Under the pieces are notes generated by a model. The model saw nothing but the letters and a program-made list of their open reading frames with translations. It was not told the DNA's origin and did not search any database. A DNA stretch of 63,944 nucleotides, filler included, from Reticulomyxa filosa (taxonomy: Eukaryota; Protista; Foraminifera): the NCBI GenBank assembly GCA_000512085.1. It is 25 parts of 25 records of this genome, joined end to end, with 100 filler letters (N's around TTAATTAATTAA, not from the genome) between each part and the next. Parts side by side here need not be neighbours in the genome. Positions count along the whole stretch, not along the records: positions 61,812 to 63,944 come from ASPP01032876.1; 24 more parts are not named here. One strand, written 5' to 3'. The stretch's first letter is position 1, and every line of letters begins with the position of its first letter. Below, in pieces: positions 1-63,944 of the stretch. Both the position numbers and the translations under genes were made by a program.

Positions 1-1012
1 TCGTCCGTCCAAAACAGCACCGAACGCACATATAGTTCGTTTTCTACGACTGCGAGAAAAACGCAGCCGACAGCGATAAAATCCCAAGCTAATGAAAAGG
101 ATAAGTCCGACCATGATGACAGAAAATTTGAACCGAATAGGCTTCCAAGTGATACCAATATTGGTAAAGGTATTGTTTGATTGTCCAACGCTACTGCCAG
201 TGGTGAATGAATCTTTTAACTTTTTTTTTAAACAACAAAGGAACTTTTAATTTTTTTTTAAAGATGACTAATGCTATGTGAACCAAGTCCCAAAGACAAT
301 AAACAGTCGAATACATTATACAATGACGCGGTTGACAACATACCATTTGGAATGGAATTCGTTTCAGACGTTCGGTCGCGTATCTATCAACATTTTTCCA
401 GTAGTACTACGTATATTGGATCGACATACTTGTGCAAGTTTGTTCTATATGACGACACGTCCCCTTACTCTCACATGCACACCGCCGTCGCTGTCTCTGA
501 CAATAATTCATCGATCAAATCACGACAGCGCATGATCTCTCTGTGTCCAAGGACTTACCCCTTCTCAAGACAAGGGACAATTTTTCGCTTCTGTCGATGA
601 TTTCGATTCATACTCCAGTACCAAGCCAACTCTATCCACAAGTTATATACATGTATATGTATATCCAAATGATCTCTAAAGTCTTTATGCGAATATTGAC
701 AGACGGTAAGAAGATGCAACATCCAAAAGGATAGTTGCTGAAGTTCTTGGCACGCTCAAATAATAATAAAAAACCACTGGAACTACGATATCTACTGTCA
801 ATAGCCACAACAGTAGCATCAGTGTGAGCACAAGTAACGCACATGCAAATAGTGATAACAGTATATACATTTTGGGTGGGCGTGGCCAAGACACGGCCAA
901 AGAGTCAAGTGCAATGCCGCTGCTAGTGATTGAGGAAATGCAAAGTCTGTCGTTCACGACAATGCCAATAAGCATTTGTCCTTTGCTTATGTCGCAAGGA
1001 AGCAACCTAATA
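1..1012 (+). CDS. Hypothetical S/T-rich protein, partial spliced gene (possibly frameshifted or a pseudogene)
   Basis: Coding-like blocks at 1-168, 264-640 and ~780-1012 are flanked by GT/AG and T/A-rich intron-like DNA. No domain recognised, and the frames do not join cleanly. Confidence 0.3.
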
Positions 1013-1442
1013 GTTGGGTTCAAGTTAATCAAGCGAAAAATTTTATTTTTTTTCTTATATATGTGTATACGGATTTTATTATTCAAGTATAATTATAAAA
1101 AAAAATAGAAAATAAAAAGTTTTTGCATGTGATTGATACTTCCATTCTATCTCACCCATTCTGATCGGGCCCTTTTTTCTGCAAATGGTAATACTAATTC
1201 AATGATAGAACTCAGTGACAGCTGTAACAATAGTAACAATAATAATAATAACAACTCCATGAATTCAATGTCCTTTATTTTTATTATTGCAATGCAAACA
1301 TCAAGGATTGACAGAATAGCCAGGTTTCATACTATAGCACATATATGTACGAATAATAATTATTATTATATATTTGTATATATGTATATGTTGTTTTGTT
1401 TACATAAAATTAAAAGTGGCTAGAACGTGCTAATTGTGTTTG

Positions 1443-1542
1443 NNNNNNNNNNNNNNNNNNNNNNNNNNNNNNNNNNNNNNNNNNNNTTAATTAATTAANN
1501 NNNNNNNNNNNNNNNNNNNNNNNNNNNNNNNNNNNNNNNNNN
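1443..1542. other. Artificial contig linker N44-TTAATTAATTAA-N44 (first of 24)
   Basis: Identical 100-bp linkers start at 1443, 6411, 7587, 8746, 11018, 12118, 18215, 19435, 22044, 26168, 27307, 28577, 29839, 32002, 33787, 37135, 43469, 44644, 46597, 50198, 53364, 54660, 57835 and 61712. The core gives stops in all six frames. Contigs often end in homopolymers or microsatellites. Confidence 0.98.
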
Positions 1543-1815
1543 CCCGAGTTCAAACCTTTAGAATAGGGACTTGTACTACACGTTCATTTTTTTTTCTTGC
1601 TACTTCGCAATTCATTCACTTTTGCTCATGTTTTAGTTTTATTCGTTTCATCATTTCACAAATTAATGGCAGTTTTAGATATGATAAAAAATTTTTTTAA
1701 TATCAATTATATCAATTATACCATTTACATCAACGTAAAAAAAAGGGGTAATTTTATTACTTAAGTAGTTTTGTGAACGTGAGTTAATTTAGTTTTACAC
1801 AAAACTAGAGAAAAG

Positions 1816-3353
1816 ATGACAGTTTTTTCTGCAATATTGATAGTGATTTCTTTGTTTAAAATTTCTCATTGTGAAAAGTTAGGACTGGACTTTTTGGTAA
1901 TGGGAGACTGGGGAGGGTCCTCCGATGCACCAAACTACACAACTACTGACGAGATCAGTACAGCATCTGTTATGGGAGGATTAGCAGAACAGTACCCGAT
2001 TGAATTTGTTCTAGGACTAGGTGACAATTTCTATGAATACGGAATCCGAGGAGATGCAAATGATCCAAGATTTAAAGAAGTTTTTTTTTACCTCTCTTGG
2101 CATACTTTTTTAATTGTATAAGCGGTCCCTCCCAAAGGTGAGGCTAAGAAAAAGAAAATCGTGTAATTTACAGGTTGTGAATGAACAATAGACATTTGAT
2201 GACGTATTCACGAGTCAATCATTGCAGAACATGTCTTTCCATTTCATTGCTGGAAACCATGACTGGCGAGGTTAGGCCACATTTTTGTATACATTCGTTG
2301 GTGACAAAAGGGAGTTATGAAAAAAAAAAAATCGAAAGGGAATGTGAGTGCTGAAGTTGCACATTCTGCATTATCCCAACGTTGGAAATTTCCAAGTTAT
2401 TATTACACATTGAGTTTCAATATTCCAGTCAATGTAAGCAACACTATTCAAAATTTGACTGTCGATATAATCATGTTGGATACTGTTTTATTAGTCGGAC
2501 TGAGGTGAGACTAATCTGTTCCTTTTCTCTGCTATCTTTTTTGTCTTGTTTGTCTCTCAATTTTATGTTCAACTAATATTTGACCCACATCGAACTTGTA
2601 ACTATGGGGATCAAAAATGACAAAAATAGCGACGACAACGATGAGTATTATTATAAACAGTGTGCGGAACAGGGAATTCCAAAAGACAAATGTCCGCTGA
2701 GTCAACCAATGGGAGCAGTGTTTGAAGAGGAATGGACATGGCTGAAAGCACAACTTGCCAGCAGTACTGCCAATTACATATTGGTATGTGGACACTACCC
2801 CATTTATTCAATTGCGGAACATGGACCCACTTGGTCATTGGTCGAAAAGTTAAAACCTTTATTGCTTGAATACCAAGTCAGCGCTTACATCAATGGACAC
2901 GACCATACCTTTGAATTCATCCAATTCGATTCCAAAGATGAAAAAGAAGATTATATTGCTTACGTCACTGTTGGTGGCTCGCATACTTGTGATTCCTCCA
3001 CTGCTCATAAAGTTTTGATAAATATATTTATTTTTTTTTTTTTTTTTTTTACAAACATCAAAATATGGTTCATTTTGTTTATCCAGTATAAACGTGTATA
3101 TTTATATGTCAATATATATCTTACATTTAATATGTGTATATACATATTCGGCCTCCCTGCACACACGTTTTTGTTGTTGTTTCCGTCGCTGCATTAGATA
3201 TTTGTTCCCGACAGTGCGCTTCATTTTCATGGATGCAGCAGTGGCGGAACTGCACGAGTTCACATAGAAAATGACTTGCAGTTTTTCTTTTATTATGGAA
3301 CATCTAGTCAAACTATTGTGTATGCTAGCCCTCAAATCAAACCCAGACACTAA
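1816..3353 (+). CDS. ACP5: Secreted purple acid phosphatase / tartrate-resistant acid phosphatase type 5-like (5 exons)
   Basis: Exons 1816-2079, 2192-2270, 2339-2504, 2630-3011 and 3198-3353 join in frame via GT-AG. Signal peptide plus all five metal-ligand motifs: GDWG, GDNFY, GNHD, GHYP, GHDH. Confidence 0.93.
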
Positions 3354-3756
3354 GTATTTGTTGTTTTAAAGTCGTTATCTCGCATTTTTTTCGTTTCAAT
3401 CAGTTTGTAAACTTTTTTTTACTTTTCTATTTGAAACTTAAGTCCTTCATAAGTAGCTATTTAGGGCTCTGGGTTCATTCTGTTCCAGTAATTCACGGAA
3501 TATCTTGCAATGCTTCGATGCTCATTTACGCCTTCTTCAAAATAAAGAATTTCTCACTCAAGCACTTTTTTTGTTAACTACGTCGGAAAACTAAAATCTC
3601 AAGCAAAAATATAATTAACGTTTCAAAGACCGTGTCCAATCTGTACAGGATCGCTTTCTTATAGTCATTAATAATTGTAGTCAAGTGATTCAAATGTGGT
3701 TTGTTAATGCTTTGAAACCACCGTACAAAAAGGGAAGACCCAGTTTGTATTGCTCC

Positions 3757-4935
3757 ATGGATGAGTCCTTGCCCTCCGACAAAACAAACGAGCCAGTGAT
3801 TCGGCGGCTTTCTAGTCTAACTTTAAGCAAAAAAACACGACCAAGTTTAAGAACAGAGCCATCTATTGTAAAAACAAGCCCAACGGACAAGAACACTGAA
3901 TTTTGGAACGACTTGTATCGTGAAGGAAATATTGCAAACATTGTCGGCAGAAATTATGACACTGTAATAACCAAAGAGGATGCAATATTAATATTATGTA
4001 ATTATCTCCATGTATCCGAAAATTATATAGACACAAATCATCCCTTAATTGGATTACTATCGAACCAATCGATTCGTTTTTTGCGACATAAGATCCAAAC
4101 TGACAACGAATTTTTCGAAACAGTCCGGCAATACTTGGGACAGTTAAATGAGAAGTACTACATTTACTCGTATTCCAATTTCGATGAATGCTGTGATAAA
4201 AGTACAAAAGTCGAAAATGACAAAGCACACAATTCGTTTTATCCTGCTCAGTCTCAATATCAGTCTCAGCTTCCATCTCAGCGACATATTCATACTGTGA
4301 GTGAAGACGCCTTCGAATTTGTCGATCCTGAGACCATGTACGAACAAGAGGAATGGGCGTTTGACGATCAACGTTTCGTTGTTGCTTACACGTATACAAC
4401 TTTTACACCGTATACAGAAAAATAGACAAGTGTAATACGATTGTCAACCAACTTTTTACAACCAAAAAAAAAAAACTATTTTTCTTGTTTCCCTCCCTCT
4501 TTTTTTAATTTTTATTTGAATCAAGGCTTCAAACCAATCGAAACTGATGCAGATGTGGAAAAAGAAGAATTGGTTGAGAATAATGATCACAAAGAAAAAG
4601 GAGAAATAATGGAAAAAGTGAATGAGTTGCGAAGCGCAAGAAAAAAAAGCGGACATGCGAAAATGAGCGCAAGCGGAAAAAGAAAAAAAAAACAAAGCGA
4701 AATAATGAGCGAACAAGCGTTTGAAGAATCTATTATTTTGACTCCGATGGCCAGTTTAAAGCTTGCTTTGGACGCTCAAAGTAATAGTGAGCACAGTGAA
4801 ACATCGCCCCAAGTTCGTCAGCAAACTTTATCTATCAGTGTCACATCCGAAAATGGGACTGTTTTTCAATTGGTTCCATTCAATGATTGGTCGTCCAATC
4901 CATTAGTTTTATCTTCCACGCCACCAAACAAATAA
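3757..4935 (+). CDS. Hypothetical protein (probably 2 exons)
   Basis: Long ORFs 3685-4425 (first convincing ATG, MDESLPS, at 3757) and 4441-4935 are separated by an A/T-rich intron-like stretch ending AATCAAG. No domain recognised. Confidence 0.55.
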
Positions 4936-7049
4936 ACGCTGATAAACATAAAAGAGATTTTTTGCAGAAAAAAAAACTTTTTTTTAATTTTATCTATGTC
5001 TTTGTCTTGTCCGATCATATCTGAACGGCTTTCTTTTTATCCCTTGTTGTTATGAAAAAAATTGGTGTTGTTCTATTTGATTTAGGTTTTGTTCAGTTCT
5101 CTTATGTTATTTACGGAGAGAAAATCAATGTAACTCTTTTTTTTTTGTTGTTGCTCGTTTTCTTTCTTCTGTTAGAAGCACAAAACAAACAAAAATATAT
5201 GTGTAACATACATGTATTATTATGTACACTGTGTATGCACATCTATATATTTTTTGCTGTTGTTCGTTTTTTGTGTTTCTTGGTTTACACTCTTTCTTTT
5301 TCCATATTTTATTTTACTTTTACTTTGGTGCACAACAACAAAAAAAGAAAGATAGAACACTGAACTGTGCATGTATCTTTGTATTTCTTGTGACATCCTA
5401 CTAATGTCACGACACGCAAACCCGAAACTTGGCGAAAATAAACACACATTATTTGTACAACTACTTTTTTTTCCAGTGTCGTTTCTCCCTAGTTTTTTTT
5501 GTCTGATTTCGGTGTGCGTGTTGTGCTGTGGAAATGGGAAAACGATCAAGTGTAAAGGTCGTTTGGATGCGTGTTTTGAGTTTCTTTGTCATTTCTGTTT
5601 AATTGTTCGTCATTATTGATCGTGTTTCCATTTGTCTTTGAACTATTTTTGACTGTTCAATTAGTGAACAATTAATTGAAGCAATACAAAAAGGTAAAAC
5701 TGGCTGCTGAAAAACACATCACTAATCATAAAGTATCTCTTCGCAGAAAAGCAAAGTACACTGAGATTTATTCACCTTTTTTTATCAATTGTAATATTAT
5801 TTTGCTATTTCAAAAGTAGTAGGCCTTTTGTCAGTTTAATTTCTTGCCCAATAAATGCAATACTTCCTCAAGATGAACAACATCAATTAGATGAATTGAA
5901 AACAATCATAATATTTTATGTATTTTACAAAACGTATACATTTTTTTCAATTTCTTTGTTCAGACAGTTAAAAATAGATAAACATTAAATCTTTTTGCGT
6001 TTGAGATTTCTCATACACGTTTCGAAAAAACGATTTGTTGAACGCCTTGCAAATGAAATACTGTATTCAAATATCTTATACTTATAACTGGCTCTACATT
6101 AAGAGTAAATAATTTTTTGATTAGCAAAGAATTATTACTTGTCCGTTTTGTCCATTATTTTCATTCAACACTCAAATGACAAGTATACAAAACGATCATT
6201 TACTGAAATAATGTAATAATGTAATGTCGATTAAAGAGATTGCAAATGTATCTATTACTTATATTGACATAGTCATATATTCGCGATAATATTGAAAAAT
6301 ACACTGTAAATTTGTTTCAATTAAATGATTTAATTATCTTATCATTCTGTCGTGCTAAATATGTTATCAGAAAACTAAAAATCAATTTTTTTTTAAGACG
6401 AAAAAAAAAANNNNNNNNNNNNNNNNNNNNNNNNNNNNNNNNNNNNNNNNNNNNTTAATTAATTAANNNNNNNNNNNNNNNNNNNNNNNNNNNNNNNNNN
6501 NNNNNNNNNNTACATTAATTGAAATTTACGAAAAACAAAAGATCAATAAACTTTTTACATTTTGCTAAAAGTTTCAAAAATAAAAGAGTCCATGTAAAAA
6601 AGCTAATGACAGAACAAAATGTAATACGAAAGGTTTTGCTCATCGAGCAAATTGAACCGAGTGAAAAATTGAATAAAAGAAAAAAATATCAGACAAATAC
6701 AAAGGGTATGTATGAGAAGTACTCGAAAAGGATAAGCAACAAAATGTTAAATAATGAGAGCCCGGAGTTTCTCGATATGCGGAGTTGAGCTACAAACACT
6801 GGTGTTGTTTTAATGTTTTTTTCAATTTTGTAAAAAACACTCTTTAGATGCAGAATGATGTAAAAATAAATGAGCACTTTAAATGTTAATAATAGACCAA
6901 TCTAAATTGGATAATTGTACTTGTTTCCATTTACAAATTAAAGTATTGACCCAACAAAGTTTTTAAGCAATCTCCAGGTCTGCTCTTTTTTTGTAAGGTG
7001 TAACTTTAATTTTTTAAAAAAGTAAAAAGAAATACAAGAGATTGAGAAC

Positions 7050-25568: not shown

Positions 25569-26167
25569 ATGACCACTCTTAGCAATGAAAAACAAACTTC
25601 AGCTCAACTGCCACTAGTCAGCTTTTTAGAAACTTGATTGCTTATGTTTTTTTTGTATTTATTTAATTTATTGTATATACTTTATGATTGAATCAGGCAA
25701 AAGAACAAGAAATCCAAATCATTATTCAGCATTGGATTCGAATATTAAATATCAAATTAGGATGGATTAATAATTTTGACAAACTTGTTGTCGATTACGT
25801 TATGTTGTTTTTTTTTTATTAAAATAAATAGTGCAAATAATATTTATCTATAATCACAATTAACACAGGCAATTAATTTTTTCATATTTGACACCTTCCA
25901 TTCGTCATCCAAATTACTCAAAACATTTACTGGACACACTAATTATTTATGGAGTATTGATTATTCAGTATTTGATGATAAACAATTCATTTGTTCTGGA
26001 TCAGAAGATAATACAGTCTGTGTATGGGATATAGGAAATATCAAAAAAATCCAATCATTCAATAGACATTCAAACCCTGTATATTGTGTAAAATTTTCAC
26101 CATATCATTATCATAACAATCACCAAAATGTCATTTGTTCTTCATCAAGTGACGAAACCATTCGTTT
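25569..26167 (+). CDS. WD40-repeat protein of the expanded lineage-specific family, 5' part
   Basis: Exons 25569-25616, 25697-25798 and 25869-26167+: MTTLSNEKQTSAQLPL / AKEQEIQIIIQHWIRILNIKLGWINNFDKLVVDY / ...SSSKLLKTFTGHTNYLWSIDY...CSGSEDNTVCVWD. Same exon structure as the paralog at 62434. Confidence 0.92.
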
Positions 26168-41061: not shown

Positions 41062-42306
41062 TTACATCAAAAAGTGCAAGACAAGAGCAGCAAAGTCGAC
41101 AGCCCAGCCAAGACTTTTCAAGTGATAGCATCGAATCCAATGTCTTAAGATGACATTGACTTCTTTTGGAGTGCACTTTTTTTTTTTGTTGTACCAAACA
41201 AACAAACAAAAACCAAAGAAGCAATAGATAACCAGCACTGAAACAAACAAAACAAAACACAAAAAAACACCAACATGTTGACATTTAAAAATGAAATGAG
41301 TGTTTAAATGTTGGCCTTTGGTGTCTTGTCCTCCGATCAAATGGAAAACAGGTTCTCCAACTCGAGCGACAGCAACCGATCCGTTAATGGACAGAGGTAT
41401 TTTATGAGGGTATCTGGTCCACGTTTTGCAGTGCACATGAAATACATGGACGTCATCAGAGGACGTCCTCCAGCTGCCAGAGTAGCCCCCGAGCACAATG
41501 AGTTGGGGTTCGAGGAACACATACGTATAACGTTGTTGCATAAGCACAGAGTGGAAGGACTCGGTTTTTTGTTCATCGAACGTAAACCGGTTTGCACTTT
41601 GGTCATATCGGAACGTATACATGTTCCCATCATGGAGCAGCAAAAAATGATTGGGTGCCAATAATACAAGTCCATGGAAGTGCAACTCGGACACAGGCAA
41701 ATGACTATCTTGCACATGTTGCACAAAGGAAAACGAGCGTAAATCAATAATGTCAATGTTATGTGGTGGGTGTGTGACAAACAATAAGTTATTGTTTTCA
41801 CCACTTACCAAACCACGTGCATCTGTCCAGTCTTTGTTTTTATCATTGCTTTGCTTTGATTCGACAATGATCCATTCATTGAATCTCTCACCCTCTCTTG
41901 CACATGTGCCCACACTTTTCCACACACTTTGGTACCTCAGCACCAACATATGCGTCGCTGTCCATTCCCCATCTCCTCCCAATGACACCAATGTTGTGTA
42001 CCTCTTTGCTGTCTGCTCTTCGCATTTTATGACACTGTGTCCATCCAACTCCACCTCTATCGGGTATGCACATACCTCTTTGTATTGACGCTTTGTCACG
42101 TGGTAGGAATAACATTTGCTCATAAAGTATCCTCCACAGATCAGAATTTCGTCTTCTACCGACACGCATTGCCCCAGCCAGAGCTCCGTTGGCAACGGTG
42201 GCAGTGTCGCCACTATTAAAGGATTCTCCAATGTACTTTCACTCGTCATGTCAGGCAACTCCAGACGTTTCATTCTGTCTTCTTCAGCTTCATTTTGATT
42301 TAACAT
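41062..42306 (-). CDS. Kelch-repeat beta-propeller protein with C-terminal HWIR-LGW motif (2 exons)
   Basis: Kelch GG motifs (ILICGG..CYSY, LVSLGG, LIVLGGYSG, FHLIGG). A 99-nt GT-AG intron at 41176-41274. The last exon encodes CTPKEVNVILRHWIRCYHLKSLGWAVDFAALVLHFLM*. Confidence 0.9.
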   Translation of the reverse strand: MLNQNEAEEDRMKRLELPDMTSESTLENPLIVATLPPLPTELWLGQCVSVEDEILICGGYFMSKCYSYHVTKRQYKEVCAYPIEVELDGHSVIKCEEQTAKRYTTLVSLGGDGEWTATHMLVLRYQSVWKSVGTCAREGERFNEWIIVESKQSNDKNKDWTDARGLVSGENNNLLFVTHPPHNIDIIDLRSFSFVQHVQDSHLPVSELHFHGLVLLAPNHFLLLHDGNMYTFRYDQSANRFTFDEQKTESFHSVLMQQRYTYVFLEPQLIVLGGYSGSWRTSSDDVHVFHVHCKTWTRYPHKIPLSINGSVAVARVGEPVFHLIGGQDTKGQHLNTHFIFKCQHVGVFLCFVLFVSVLVIYCFFGFCLFVWYNKKKKCTPKEVNVILRHWIRCYHLKSLGWAVDFAALVLHFLM

Positions 42307-61675: not shown

Positions 61676-62433
61676 CTATTTCATTCAATAATTTTCAAGT
61701 TTTTTTTTTTTNNNNNNNNNNNNNNNNNNNNNNNNNNNNNNNNNNNNNNNNNNNNTTAATTAATTAANNNNNNNNNNNNNNNNNNNNNNNNNNNNNNNNN
61801 NNNNNNNNNNNACAAAAAATAATGTCCTTTTAAATGGATGTCTAATAATTTATAATTTAAGAAACAAGAGAAAGAAGGAAGGACTTGACAATGAAACATA
61901 TTAGTGTCAAAATATAATGAATTCATCTCTTATTATTTTCTTTGAAATCTTTAATAAGTCTTAAAAATTTAGACTTATAAAATCAATAAAAATGAACTTG
62001 TTCTGTTGGCAATACAAATGTTTCATGCTATCAGTTGCAAACTCAAATAAGACAGTGATCTTTATTATCAACTATCAAATTTATTATATTACTTGATGAG
62101 ATTGACTTCATATTCATCAAACAATTTACTACATTGCAGGTCCGATCTTTAGTCAAACGAGCATTTGTGTTTAAATTCATTGGTGATGATGTAATTCCAA
62201 TAAGTTGTCAATTCCTTGTAAGGAAGTTGGGTCTGAACTTAGGAATACCTTTTTTCCCAAATTTACTGGTTACTTTTATTTGCTTTCTTTTATTTGATGT
62301 TTTTCTGTTTTATTTTCTTTATTTATCTCTTGTTACAGTTTGCTCGAAGGATGATCATCCTTAAAAAAAAGTTCAAACATTTTTCATCTTACATCTGAGA
62401 CATTATTAATATAAAAACAAAAGAGATTGGAAG

Positions 62434-63827
62434 ATGATCACCAGCAACAATGAAAAACAGTCTTCCACGCAACTCTCATTTGTAAGCGTCAACTAAGTCT
62501 TTTCGAAAACTAGTTGCTTTATGTTTTATTGTGTTCATTGTATTAATTTGTGATTGAATTAGTTAAAAGATAAAGAAGAAGAGATCCAAATAATTATTCA
62601 GCATTGGATTCGAACATTAAATATTAAATTAGGATGGATCAAAGATTTTGACAAACTTGTTGTCAATTATGTTATGTCTTTTTTATTTTTCATTAAAACA
62701 TTCATAAAATATATAGTATTATTTGTTATCATTTTTTAACGCAGGCAACCACGGTCTTTATGCTTGATACGTTTTCTTCATCGTCCAAACTACTCAAAAC
62801 ATTCACTGGGCACTCTGCTCGTGTGTACAGTATTGATTGTACAACATTTGATAATATGCATTTTCTTTGTTCTGGATCAACAGATAATACAGTTCGTGTA
62901 TGGGATATCGAAAACAACAAACAAATTCAATCATTTAATGAACATGTAGATTATGTATATTGTGTGAGATTTTCACCATATCATCACTATAATCACAGTC
63001 GCAATGTCATTTGTTCTTCATCAAATGATAAAACCATCCGTTTTTGGGATATCAAAGATAATCGACAATTGAAAATATATAATGAATGCACCACCTGGGT
63101 TGGTGGAATTGAATTTTCATCATTTAATAGTGGTAGATATTTGTGTTTTGGATCTGGTGAAAATAACATCAATCTTTGGGATGTTGAAACATCCAAGTCA
63201 TTACATTCTTTCAATGGACATGAAAGTGGTGTTTGGTGTGTGAATATTTCACCATTACAAAGTAATAACAATAATGATAGTAAAAGTAATATGATTGGTG
63301 TGATTGGTGGAAATGGATATACTATTTGTTCTGGATCACTGGATAATACCATTCGAATATGGGATATTGAAACAGCCAAACAATTGAATATATTCAAAGG
63401 ACATAAATTTATTGTAACTAGTGTAAAATATGGCTCAAATGAATTAGTAAATACAATATTATCTGGATCAAATGATACAAGTGTTCGTTTGTGGGATATT
63501 CGATCTGGTCAACAAATTCAAGAGTTCAATGGACACATTAGTTTAGTTAAAGCTGTTGAATATTCACCATTTATAGTAAATAATATCGAAGCTAGTGGTA
63601 GTTCAAATATTGTATGTTCTGGATCAATTGATAATACAATTCGGTTTTGGGATGCCCGATCAAATAAGAAGGAATTGTATACAGTCAATGGAAATGATCA
63701 AAAAGATTTTGGAATATCTTGTTTTAAATTTCTACAATTCAAAAAGAAAAACAGAAGCAATTATTGTAGTTATAGCACCAATTTGTTTTATGGTTCACAA
63801 AGGGGATGCATTTGTATTTGGGGATAG
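62434..63827 (+). CDS. Complete WD40-repeat protein of the expanded family, with N-terminal HWIR-LGW motif
   Basis: Exons 62434-62481, 62563-62670 and 62745-63827. About seven WD repeats (GH...CSGS.D.T.R.WD). Confidence 0.95.
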
Positions 63828-63944
63828 TGTAATTTTCCACAAAAAAACTTTGATTGCTTGATTCTTTTAAAAGAATTAAAAATAATTTTGCTCAATTAAT
63901 TAATATATTTCTACCTCTCATTAAACATTCGAAGAATATAAAAA

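What the first reader, a model, noticed from the sequence alone, without database searches (positions are those of the whole stretch)
62563..62670. A mobile ~32-aa 'HWIR-LGW box' on its own exon, attached to different beta-propellers: candidate undescribed F-box/SOCS-box-like adaptor system
Seen: the same motif occurs in unrelated scaffolds on independent contigs. At WD40 N-termini it reads EEIQIIIQHWIRTLNIKLGWIKDFDKLVVNY (62563-62670) and QEIQIIIQHWIRILNIKLGWINNFDKLVVDY (25697-25798). At the Kelch C-terminus it reads KEVNVILRHWIRCYHLKSLGWAVDFAALVLHF (41062-41175, minus). In both WD40 genes it fills a symmetric phase 0-0 exon (108 and 102 nt). In the Kelch gene it is the whole last exon behind a phase-0 intron, the geometry expected for exon shuffling. 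Established: a short helical box joined to a variable WD40 or Kelch propeller is how F-box and SOCS/BC-box cullin-RING substrate receptors are built. Inference: this is a lineage-specific docking module that plugs many diversified propellers into one common complex, possibly for ubiquitin-based or innate-immune-like surveillance.
Basis: partly seen in the sequence, partly recalled or inferred. Interest (0 to 1): 0.85.

Follow-up and report, generated by a model that had tools for sequence, protein, structure and literature searches.

The report
Conserved helical box on foraminiferal propellers
A 36-residue helix-loop-helix "box", encoded on its own small exon, is the constant handle of a very large Reticulomyxa filosa-only family of WD40 and Kelch-like propeller proteins whose binding faces vary. 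It matches no described domain, and its partner is still unknown.

Summary
Window 62563-62670 is a 108-nt, phase 0-0 exon with AG/GT borders, lying between a 16-codon first exon and a 7-blade WD40 exon.

- **Spread.** A profile built only from WD40-type boxes finds 190 clusters among 1.84 billion proteins (92 at E<=1e-10). All 20 hits whose source was checked are Reticulomyxa filosa.
- **Architectures.** There are three: box-WD40 (the bulk), Kelch-box-WD40, and Kelch-box-stop. The box is always N-terminal to WD40, C-terminal to Kelch, or both. Kelch-linked boxes cluster on the box tree, so "mobile" is overstated.
- **Known domains.** No Pfam or PDB sequence match was found (F-box, SOCS box, LisH and IQ all absent).
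- **Structure.** AlphaFold models in two contexts give helix-loop-helix at low confidence, outside both propellers, so it is not a propeller-closing element.
- **Conservation.** The box keeps 47-66% identity across WD40 subfamilies that are only 26-34% identical. Against a 93%-identical gene copy, box dN/dS is about 0.06 and the WD40 exon about 0.89. The variable columns sit on the propeller top face.

The constant-handle, variable-propeller picture is supported. The cullin-RING adaptor role is untested. A homodimer test gave no answer, and no RNA run was listed.

The parts
62434..62481 (+). Exon 1: ATG plus 15 codons (MITSNNEKQSSTQLSF), followed by a GTAAGC donor.
   Evidence: The same short N-terminus (MTTLSNEKQTS.QL) occurs in paralogs.
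62482..62562 (+). Intron 1, 81 nt, GT..AG, phase 0.
   Evidence: It is 95.1% identical in the near-identical copy L004.
62563..62670 (+). Box exon, 108 nt and 36 codons, phase 0-0. Invariant residues are W15, R17, G24 and W25. Near-invariant residues are I11, I21, I26, F29 and Y36. It is predicted as helix, then a loop around the LGW residues, then helix.
62671..62744 (+). Intron 2, 74 nt, GTTATG..GCAG, phase 0. Its position is shared with Kelch-box-WD40 genes.
62745..63827 (+). Exon 3: a short linker (ATTVFMLDTFSSSSKLL) followed by a 7-blade WD40 propeller and a stop codon. It carries two adjacent WDxR motifs (WDIR, WDAR). Paralog-hypervariable positions lie at GH+2, GH+3 and GH+5 and at SGS[x]D.

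Best explanation
The exon encodes a Reticulomyxa-specific helix-loop-helix module of about 32 residues. It is the invariant 'handle' of a very large paralog family of beta-propeller proteins.

The module sits directly in front of a WD40 propeller, directly behind a Kelch-like propeller, or between the two. It is not part of either fold.

Inferred: it most likely works as a protein-protein docking element. Its conserved, strongly hydrophobic face (W15, I11, I21, W25, I26, F29, Y36, plus the invariant R17) would be buried either in a common partner or in other box proteins. The propellers, whose top-face positions vary between paralogs, would supply the specificity. This is the same design logic as receptor families built from a constant box and a variable propeller.

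Shown: the exon structure, the family, the three architectures, the lack of similarity to known domains, the helical prediction outside the propellers, and the stronger constraint on the box.

Inferred only: that it binds something, and what it binds.
For: **Exon and gene model.**

**Family size.** Exon 3 has 1494 hits, and the listed top 120 are all R. filosa. The box HMM is found in 75 of those 120 and in all 150 listed profile hits.

**Architectures.**
- Kelch lies N-terminal of the box in 12 of 79 scanned segments and in 26 cluster representatives.
- WD40 lies C-terminal of the box in 88-89 of 99.
- Kelch-box-stop proteins share a conserved KYS[RK]xK tail.
- In a Kelch-box-WD40 gene the box is its own 99-nt, phase 0-0 exon (L002).

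**Structure.** The AlphaFold2 models of P0004 and P0237 both give helix, loop, helix with pLDDT about 41-75, while the propellers score above 90.

**Constraint.**
- Box identity is 47-66% across subfamilies whose WD40 domains are 26-34% identical.
- Against the near-identical copy L004, box omega is 0.06 and WD40 omega is 0.89 (Fisher p = 0.048).
- Amino-acid differences are enriched in paralog-hypervariable columns (14/33 against 32/323, p = 7e-6).
- Omega is 1.89, 0.85 and 0.31 for the hypervariable, middle and conserved column classes.

**Sister paralogs.** Some carry a TRAF-type zinc finger and coiled coil joined at the same point in place of the box.
Against: - No partner is known.
- The homodimer prediction gave no answer.
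- Low pLDDT could simply mean a flexible linker.
- Within the close paralog family the box (60-67% identity) is no more conserved than the WD40 domain (67%).
- The dN/dS contrast rests on one gene pair and four substitutions in the box.
- Omega of 1.89 at the hypervariable sites is not significantly above 1 (p = 0.23).
- No RNA evidence was listed.
Confidence: 0.5

Rival explanations
1. The box is a cullin-RING substrate-receptor handle. Either it is a DCAF-like H-box or helix-loop-helix that inserts into DDB1 (CUL4), or it is a divergent Skp1- or Elongin-binding box. On this reading the family is a repertoire of E3 substrate receptors.
For: - The geometry matches: an alpha-helical element directly N-terminal to a WD40 propeller.
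- The window-type family carries two adjacent invariant WDxR motifs in 74 of 75 members.
- An H-box helix plus two adjacent WDxR motifs is the bipartite DDB1-binding signature described for DCAF1 (PMC3928422).
- Foldseek alignments to beta-TrCP and Fbw7 span about 415-430 columns, so they include the N-terminal helices, although rmsd is 7-10 A.
- Expanded adaptor families with variable substrate domains are known for F-box and BTB proteins (from my own knowledge).
Against: - There is no Pfam F-box, SOCS-box or other hit in 66 boxes at E<=10, and no PDB sequence hit.
- The sequence shows no LPxE and no BC-box.
- WDxR is absent from 19 of 30 divergent box-WD40 proteins, including all Kelch-box-WD40 ones, so it does not travel with the box.
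- No Skp1, Elongin C or DDB1 sequence was available to test.
Confidence: 0.18
2. The box is a LisH-like self-association motif. Two helices per chain would form a four-helix bundle that dimerises or oligomerises the propeller proteins, possibly mixing paralogs.
For: - The size is similar (about 33 residues) and the prediction is two helices.
- The hydrophobic content is too high for a solvent-exposed hairpin.
- Sister paralogs carry a coiled coil, a known oligomerisation device, at the same position.
- LisH-WD40 is a common architecture (from my own knowledge).
Against: - There is no Pfam LisH hit.
- The spacing between the aromatic residue and the glycine is 4 residues longer than in LisH (a comparison from memory).
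- The homodimer prediction scored ipSAE 0.00.
Confidence: 0.2
3. The box is only a structural neck or linker of the propeller, with no binding role. Its conservation would reflect the recent origin of the paralogs and folding needs.
For: - Within the close family the box is no more conserved than the WD40 domain.
- It is always adjacent to a propeller.
- The predictions have low confidence.
Against: - The box keeps 47-66% identity where the WD40 domains have fallen to 26-34%.
- It persists as the C-terminal end of Kelch-only proteins, where there is nothing to link.
- W, R, G and W are invariant.
- Omega is 0.06 against 0.89.
- It is not packed on either propeller in two models.
Confidence: 0.12

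Closest known systems
DCAF substrate receptors of CUL4-DDB1 (H-box or helix-loop-helix plus a WD40 propeller with WDxR motifs; PMC3928422)
   Same: Both have a short helical element immediately N-terminal to a 7-blade WD40 propeller. The window-type family has two adjacent, invariant WDxR motifs.
   Different: No sequence model links the box to H-boxes. WDxR is missing in most other box-WD40 subfamilies. The box also occurs at the C-terminus of Kelch-like propellers. DDB1 binding is untested.
F-box-WD40 and F-box-Kelch receptors (SCF) and SOCS-box proteins
   Same: Both follow the design of a constant short helical box plus a variable propeller, in large lineage-specific expansions.
   Different: There is no Pfam F-box or SOCS-box match, and no LPxE or BC-box. 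The box is predicted to have two helices, whereas an F-box has three. It lies after Kelch rather than before it.
LisH motif (LIS1, TBL1, TOPLESS)
   Same: Both are about 33 residues, form two helices, and often precede WD40 propellers.
   Different: There is no Pfam LisH match. The loop is longer. Dimerisation was not shown (one search gave no answer).
Fungal NWD / HET-E WD-repeat non-self recognition family (PMC1805685)
   Same: Both are large paralog families in which a few positions per WD repeat, on the interaction surface, are hypervariable while the scaffold is conserved (paper read). Both belong to organisms whose cytoplasm forms fusing networks.
   Different: The fungal proteins carry NACHT and effector domains and show repeat-level concerted evolution. 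Here the constant part is the 36-residue box, no NACHT domain was seen, and positive selection is not demonstrated.
TRAF7-like zf-TRAF / coiled-coil / WD40 proteins
   Same: Sister paralogs of the same R. filosa WD40 family (P0074, P0053) have a TRAF-type zinc finger and coiled coil joined at the same point where the box sits.
   Different: The box shows no zinc-finger or long coiled-coil features.

Membership tests
F-box (Pfam PF00646/PF12937) | Sequence match to the F-box profile, including the LPxE-type first helix. | tested here: not met
   hmmscan of the window box and of 66 boxes at E<=10 gave no F-box family. The box sequence contains no LP motif.
F-box (Pfam PF00646/PF12937) | Binds Skp1. 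| not testable with these tools
SOCS box / BC-box | BC-box (S/T/P)LxxxCxxx(V/L/I) plus a Cul-box, located C-terminally. | tested here: not met
   There is no Pfam hit, and the box consensus has no Cys and no BC-box pattern.
LisH motif | Sequence match to the LisH profile. | tested here: not met
   No LisH hit in 66 boxes at E<=10.
LisH motif | A two-helix unit that homodimerises. | tested here: inconclusive
   Two helices are predicted. The homodimer prediction gave 'no answer'.
DCAF (DDB1-CUL4 associated factor) | An alpha-helical H-box or helix-loop-helix directly N-terminal to the WD40 propeller. | tested here: inconclusive
   A helix-loop-helix is predicted directly before the propeller, but no H-box profile exists to score it against. 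Resemblance to published H-boxes is from memory only.
DCAF (DDB1-CUL4 associated factor) | Two adjacent WDxR motifs. | tested here: met
   The window has WDIR and WDAR in consecutive blades. The pair is present in 74 of 75 window-type paralogs, but in only 6 of 30 other box-WD40 proteins.
DCAF (DDB1-CUL4 associated factor) | Binds DDB1. | not testable with these tools
   DDB1 exceeds the size limit of the complex tool, and no R. filosa DDB1 sequence was in hand.
WD40 beta-propeller | Match to Pfam WD40 and a 7-blade fold. | tested here: met
   PF00400 at E = 4.5e-39. The AlphaFold2 model of paralog P0004 has 7 blades with pLDDT above 90. Foldseek top hits are WD40 propellers.
IQ calmodulin-binding motif | IQxxxRGxxxR profile match. 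| tested here: not met
   Only 1 of 66 boxes gave a weak IQ-type hit (E = 0.16).

The most novel reading that the evidence does not exclude
The box is the common docking handle of a foraminiferal repertoire of hundreds of diversified propeller receptors (WD40 and Kelch-like). These would feed one shared machine: a CUL4-DDB1-type ubiquitin ligase, or a self-assembling signalling complex used for non-self recognition or allorecognition. Reticulomyxa is a giant organism with a fusing network, which parallels fungal HET-E/NWD proteins and nematode or plant F-box expansions. On this reading the system was built from an undescribed module.
Probability: 0.22. Interest if true: 0.85.

Novelty: new variant of a known kind. 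Interest (0 to 1): 0.6.

Why it matters
Almost nothing is known about protein-level innovation in Foraminifera. This work identifies a short module with several notable properties:
- It has no described counterpart.
- It has clean exon boundaries.
- It marks one of the largest paralog families in the only well-sampled foraminiferal genome.
- It has a constant box joined to propellers with hypervariable faces.

That design is typical of ubiquitin-ligase receptor families and of recognition repertoires.

The box gives a simple, testable entry point: one 36-residue bait should reveal the shared partner of hundreds of proteins. The work also shows that many public R. filosa gene models of this family are mis-spliced, so the family is under-recognised in databases.

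Tried and rejected
- **Pfam.** Scans of the box alone and of 66 boxes at E<=10 gave nothing consistent.
- **PDB sequence search.** The box profile gave only a chance-level hit to rBAT (E = 0.08).
- **ESM Atlas.** The feature search on the box gave no usable hit.
- **Homodimer prediction.** Residues 25-80 of P0004, two copies: verdict 'no answer', ipSAE 0.00. This is no evidence either way.
- **Foldseek.** The full P0004 model returned only generic WD40 propellers. The longer alignments to beta-TrCP, Fbw7 and G-beta have high rmsd.
- **RNA runs.** None was listed.
- **Region-restricted search.** The word-index search with the box of P0004 found only 4 candidates, which is useless for counting the family.
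- **Literature.**
  - The Reticulomyxa genome paper is not held in the library.
  - Searches for Reticulomyxa with WD40 or Kelch, and for foraminifera with WD40 and paralog, found no description of this box.
- **Rejected: integral propeller-closing strand.** Both models place the box as helices outside the blades.
- **Rejected: decaying pseudogene.** The window copy mismatches only 5 of 145 strongly conserved columns, which is the family median.
- **Rejected: frequent exon shuffling.** Kelch-linked boxes cluster on the box tree, with 8 label changes against about 24 after shuffling.
  - The spliced exons were not joined into one typed protein. The closest correctly spliced database paralog, P0004, was folded instead.

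Full report
**What is in the window**

The piece 61812-63944 holds one complete gene on the + strand.
- Exon 1 is 62434-62481 (MITSNNEKQSSTQLSF), followed by a GTAAGC donor.
- The finding's exon is 62563-62670. It has an AG acceptor at 62561-62562 and a GT donor at 62671. It encodes 36 codons: LKDKEEEIQIIIQHWIRTLNIKLGWIKDFDKLVVNY.
- Exon 3 is 62745-63827. It starts with ATTVFMLDTF and continues as a WD40 propeller to a stop codon.

Both introns (81 and 74 nt) are phase 0. Pfam sees only WD40 families in exon 3 (PF00400, E = 4.5e-39) and nothing in the box, even at E<=10.

**Organism and family**

Exon 3 has 1494 database relatives. The listed top 120 are all Reticulomyxa filosa proteins, with 61-86% identity.

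At least 65 of these 120 carry the same box in front of the propeller by a pattern search, and 75 by HMM. Most of the remainder are faulty gene models rather than true exceptions:
- Some start at the internal MLDTF methionine.
- Some read through intron 2 (NY|VMFF...).
- Some start out of frame inside the box exon (MILTNLLSIM...).

Correctly spliced paralogs use exactly the junction NY|A(S/T)T(I/V)F, which supports the window model. The 66-sequence box alignment A1 has invariant W15, R17, G24 and W25, and near-invariant I11, I21, I26, F29 and Y36.

**Where else the box occurs**

A profile of A1, built from WD40-type boxes only, was run against 1.84 billion representative proteins. It returned 190 clusters at E<=1e-3, of which 92 were at E<=1e-10. 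Twenty of the 150 listed hits were traced to their source, chosen among the weakest and the most atypical. All 20 are R. filosa.

The segments after the box are WD40 in 88-89 of 99 cases. Among the segments before the box, the only recurrent real domain is a Kelch-like propeller. It was found in 12 of 79 segments by Pfam and in 26 cluster representatives by BLAST. The other upstream stretches look like translated non-coding DNA.

Three contigs were read to resolve the architectures:
- **L001** carries two tandem Kelch genes. Their last exon is the box, behind a phase-0 intron, and they end four codons later (KYSRIK*, KFSKMN*). This short basic tail recurs in at least six proteins, so Kelch-box-stop is a real architecture.
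- **L002** (P0219) has a Kelch domain, an intron, a 99-nt phase 0-0 box exon, an intron, and then WD40.
- **L003** (P0237) has the same order but lacks the intron before the box.

The intron after ...[NK]Y is at the same place in box-WD40 and Kelch-box-WD40 genes.

On a tree of box cores, the Kelch-linked boxes are strongly clustered. There are 8 label changes against about 24 in shuffles, and 18 of 25 fall in one clade. Relatedness inflates such tests, so I read this only as "few events".

The simplest history is therefore a box-WD40 unit that acquired a Kelch domain upstream, or lost the WD40 exon, a few times. A freely shuffling exon is not needed.

**What the box looks like**

It gives a confident 7-blade propeller (pLDDT above 90). 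The box appears as helix 32-46, a loop around the LGW residues, and helix 55-77, at pLDDT 41-68.

The Kelch-box-WD40 protein P0237 gives two confident propellers. Between them the box again forms two helices (367-384 and 391-415) at pLDDT 44-75.

In neither context is the box a blade or a closing strand.

Comparison searches gave no link to a known domain:
- The PDB sequence search was empty apart from a chance-level rBAT hit at E = 0.08.
- Scanning all 66 boxes against Pfam at E<=10 gave three unrelated single hits, and no F-box, SOCS box or LisH. The only IQ-type hit was one weak match.
- The ESM Atlas gave no usable hit.
- Foldseek on the whole model returned generic WD40 proteins.

**Constraint**

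Within the close paralog family, the box (60-67% pairwise identity) is as conserved as the propeller (67%).

Two other comparisons do support it.

First, across distinct WD40 subfamilies the box keeps 47-66% identity, while the attached propellers are only 26-34% identical to the window's.

Second, the window has a 93-97% identical copy in contig ASPP01025312.1 (L004). Against that copy:
- The WD40 exon (93.0% identity) is less conserved than the introns (95-96%).
- Nei-Gojobori omega is 0.06 for the box (3 synonymous and 1 non-synonymous change) and 0.89 for the WD40 exon. The Fisher test on these counts gives p = 0.048.
- Columns that are hypervariable among 34 other paralogs lie at GH+2, GH+3 and GH+5 and at the x of SGSxD in every blade. 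From general knowledge of WD40 structure, these are the top-face interaction positions.
- Those columns hold 14 of 33 differences, against 32 of 323 elsewhere (p = 7e-6).
- Omega is 1.89 for hypervariable columns, 0.85 for intermediate ones and 0.31 for conserved ones. The value of 1.89 is not significantly above 1 (p = 0.23).

The window copy is not decayed. It mismatches 5 of 145 strongly conserved columns, which is the family median.

The same pattern, a conserved scaffold with a handful of hypervariable surface positions per WD repeat, is documented for the fungal HET-E/NWD recognition family (PMC1805685).

**Mechanism**

I commit to the box being a protein-protein docking element common to all members (confidence 0.5). 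The reasons are:
- It is too hydrophobic and too invariant to be an exposed linker.
- It survives as the C-terminal end of Kelch-only proteins, where there is nothing to link.
- It is not packed on its own propellers in the models.
- Sister paralogs (P0074, P0053) carry a TRAF-type zinc finger and coiled coil at the same junction.

What it docks to is open.

A DCAF-like reading is attractive for the window-type family. An N-terminal helical element plus two adjacent WDxR motifs is the bipartite DDB1-binding signature (PMC3928422). The pair WDIR/WDAR is present in 74 of 75 window-type members. However, 19 of 30 other box-WD40 proteins, including all Kelch-box-WD40 ones, have no WDxR. That signature therefore does not travel with the box.

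A LisH-like self-association is equally possible. The one complex job I could run, a homodimer of residues 25-80 of P0004, returned 'no answer' and is reported only as tried.

**Verdict**

It is unsupported in its specifics (mobility, cullin-RING ligases, immunity).

The box appears undescribed. There is no Pfam or PDB match, and nothing was found in the searchable literature. The R. filosa genome paper itself could not be read.

I rate it a new variant of a known kind, with interest 0.6.

Noticed in passing
window 61812-63943 versus L004 (ASPP01025312.1) 671-2986: The whole piece has a 93-97% identical second copy in the public R. filosa assembly, with an indel of about 185 bp upstream. It could be an allele or a very recent duplicate. 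The WD40 exon (93.0% identity) is more diverged than the introns (95-96%), and identity along the exon is patchy (84-100% per 90 nt). That could reflect gene conversion among paralogs.
   Followed up: partly
window 63495-63506 and 63648-63659 (WDIR, WDAR): Two adjacent WDxR motifs are present in 74 of 75 window-type paralogs (W, D and R invariant or nearly so among 34 aligned ones). They are absent from most other box-WD40 subfamilies. This is the DCAF 'double WDxR' signature.
   Followed up: partly
P0074, P0053 (R. filosa paralogs of exon 3): Sister paralogs have a TRAF-type zinc finger and a coiled coil of about 100 residues joined to the WD40 at the same point where the box sits. The architecture resembles TRAF7.
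   Followed up: no
P0022, P0040, P0031, P0095; P0236: Several paralogs start with MGNPISKK, MGNSVSKK or MGNRNTA, which look like N-myristoylation signals. The window gene (MITSNN...) does not.
   Followed up: no
public R. filosa gene models, e.g. P0001, P0023, P0025, P0008, P0121: Many annotated proteins of this family are mis-modelled. Some retain intron 2 (NY|VMFF...). Some start out of frame inside the box exon (MILTNLLSIM...). Some fuse neighbouring genes (P0121 has two boxes). Some start at the internal MLDTF methionine. The box is therefore under-counted in databases.
   Followed up: partly
L001 (ASPP01020642.1) 758-6869: Three box-bearing genes lie within 7.4 kb: one box-WD40 gene on the minus strand and two tandem Kelch-box genes on the plus strand. 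Box genes are therefore clustered. An out-of-frame WD40-like relic lies at 4837-5034 on the minus strand.
   Followed up: no
L003 (ASPP01003468.1) 2100-2130 versus L002 4590-4668: The intron between Kelch and the box is precisely missing in P0237 (…SQL|EIIQFV…), while the intron after the box is kept. Only the 3' border of the box exon is universally conserved.
   Followed up: partly
P0219 residues 1-313: About 300 residues N-terminal to the Kelch-like domain have no Pfam match and were not analysed.
   Followed up: no
window 63252-63330 (SPLQSNNNNDSKSNMIGVIGGNGY): A low-complexity Asn-rich insertion in one blade is the most conserved stretch among paralogs (about 80% identity), yet AlphaFold models the corresponding residues 238-253 of P0004 at pLDDT below 50.
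   Followed up: no
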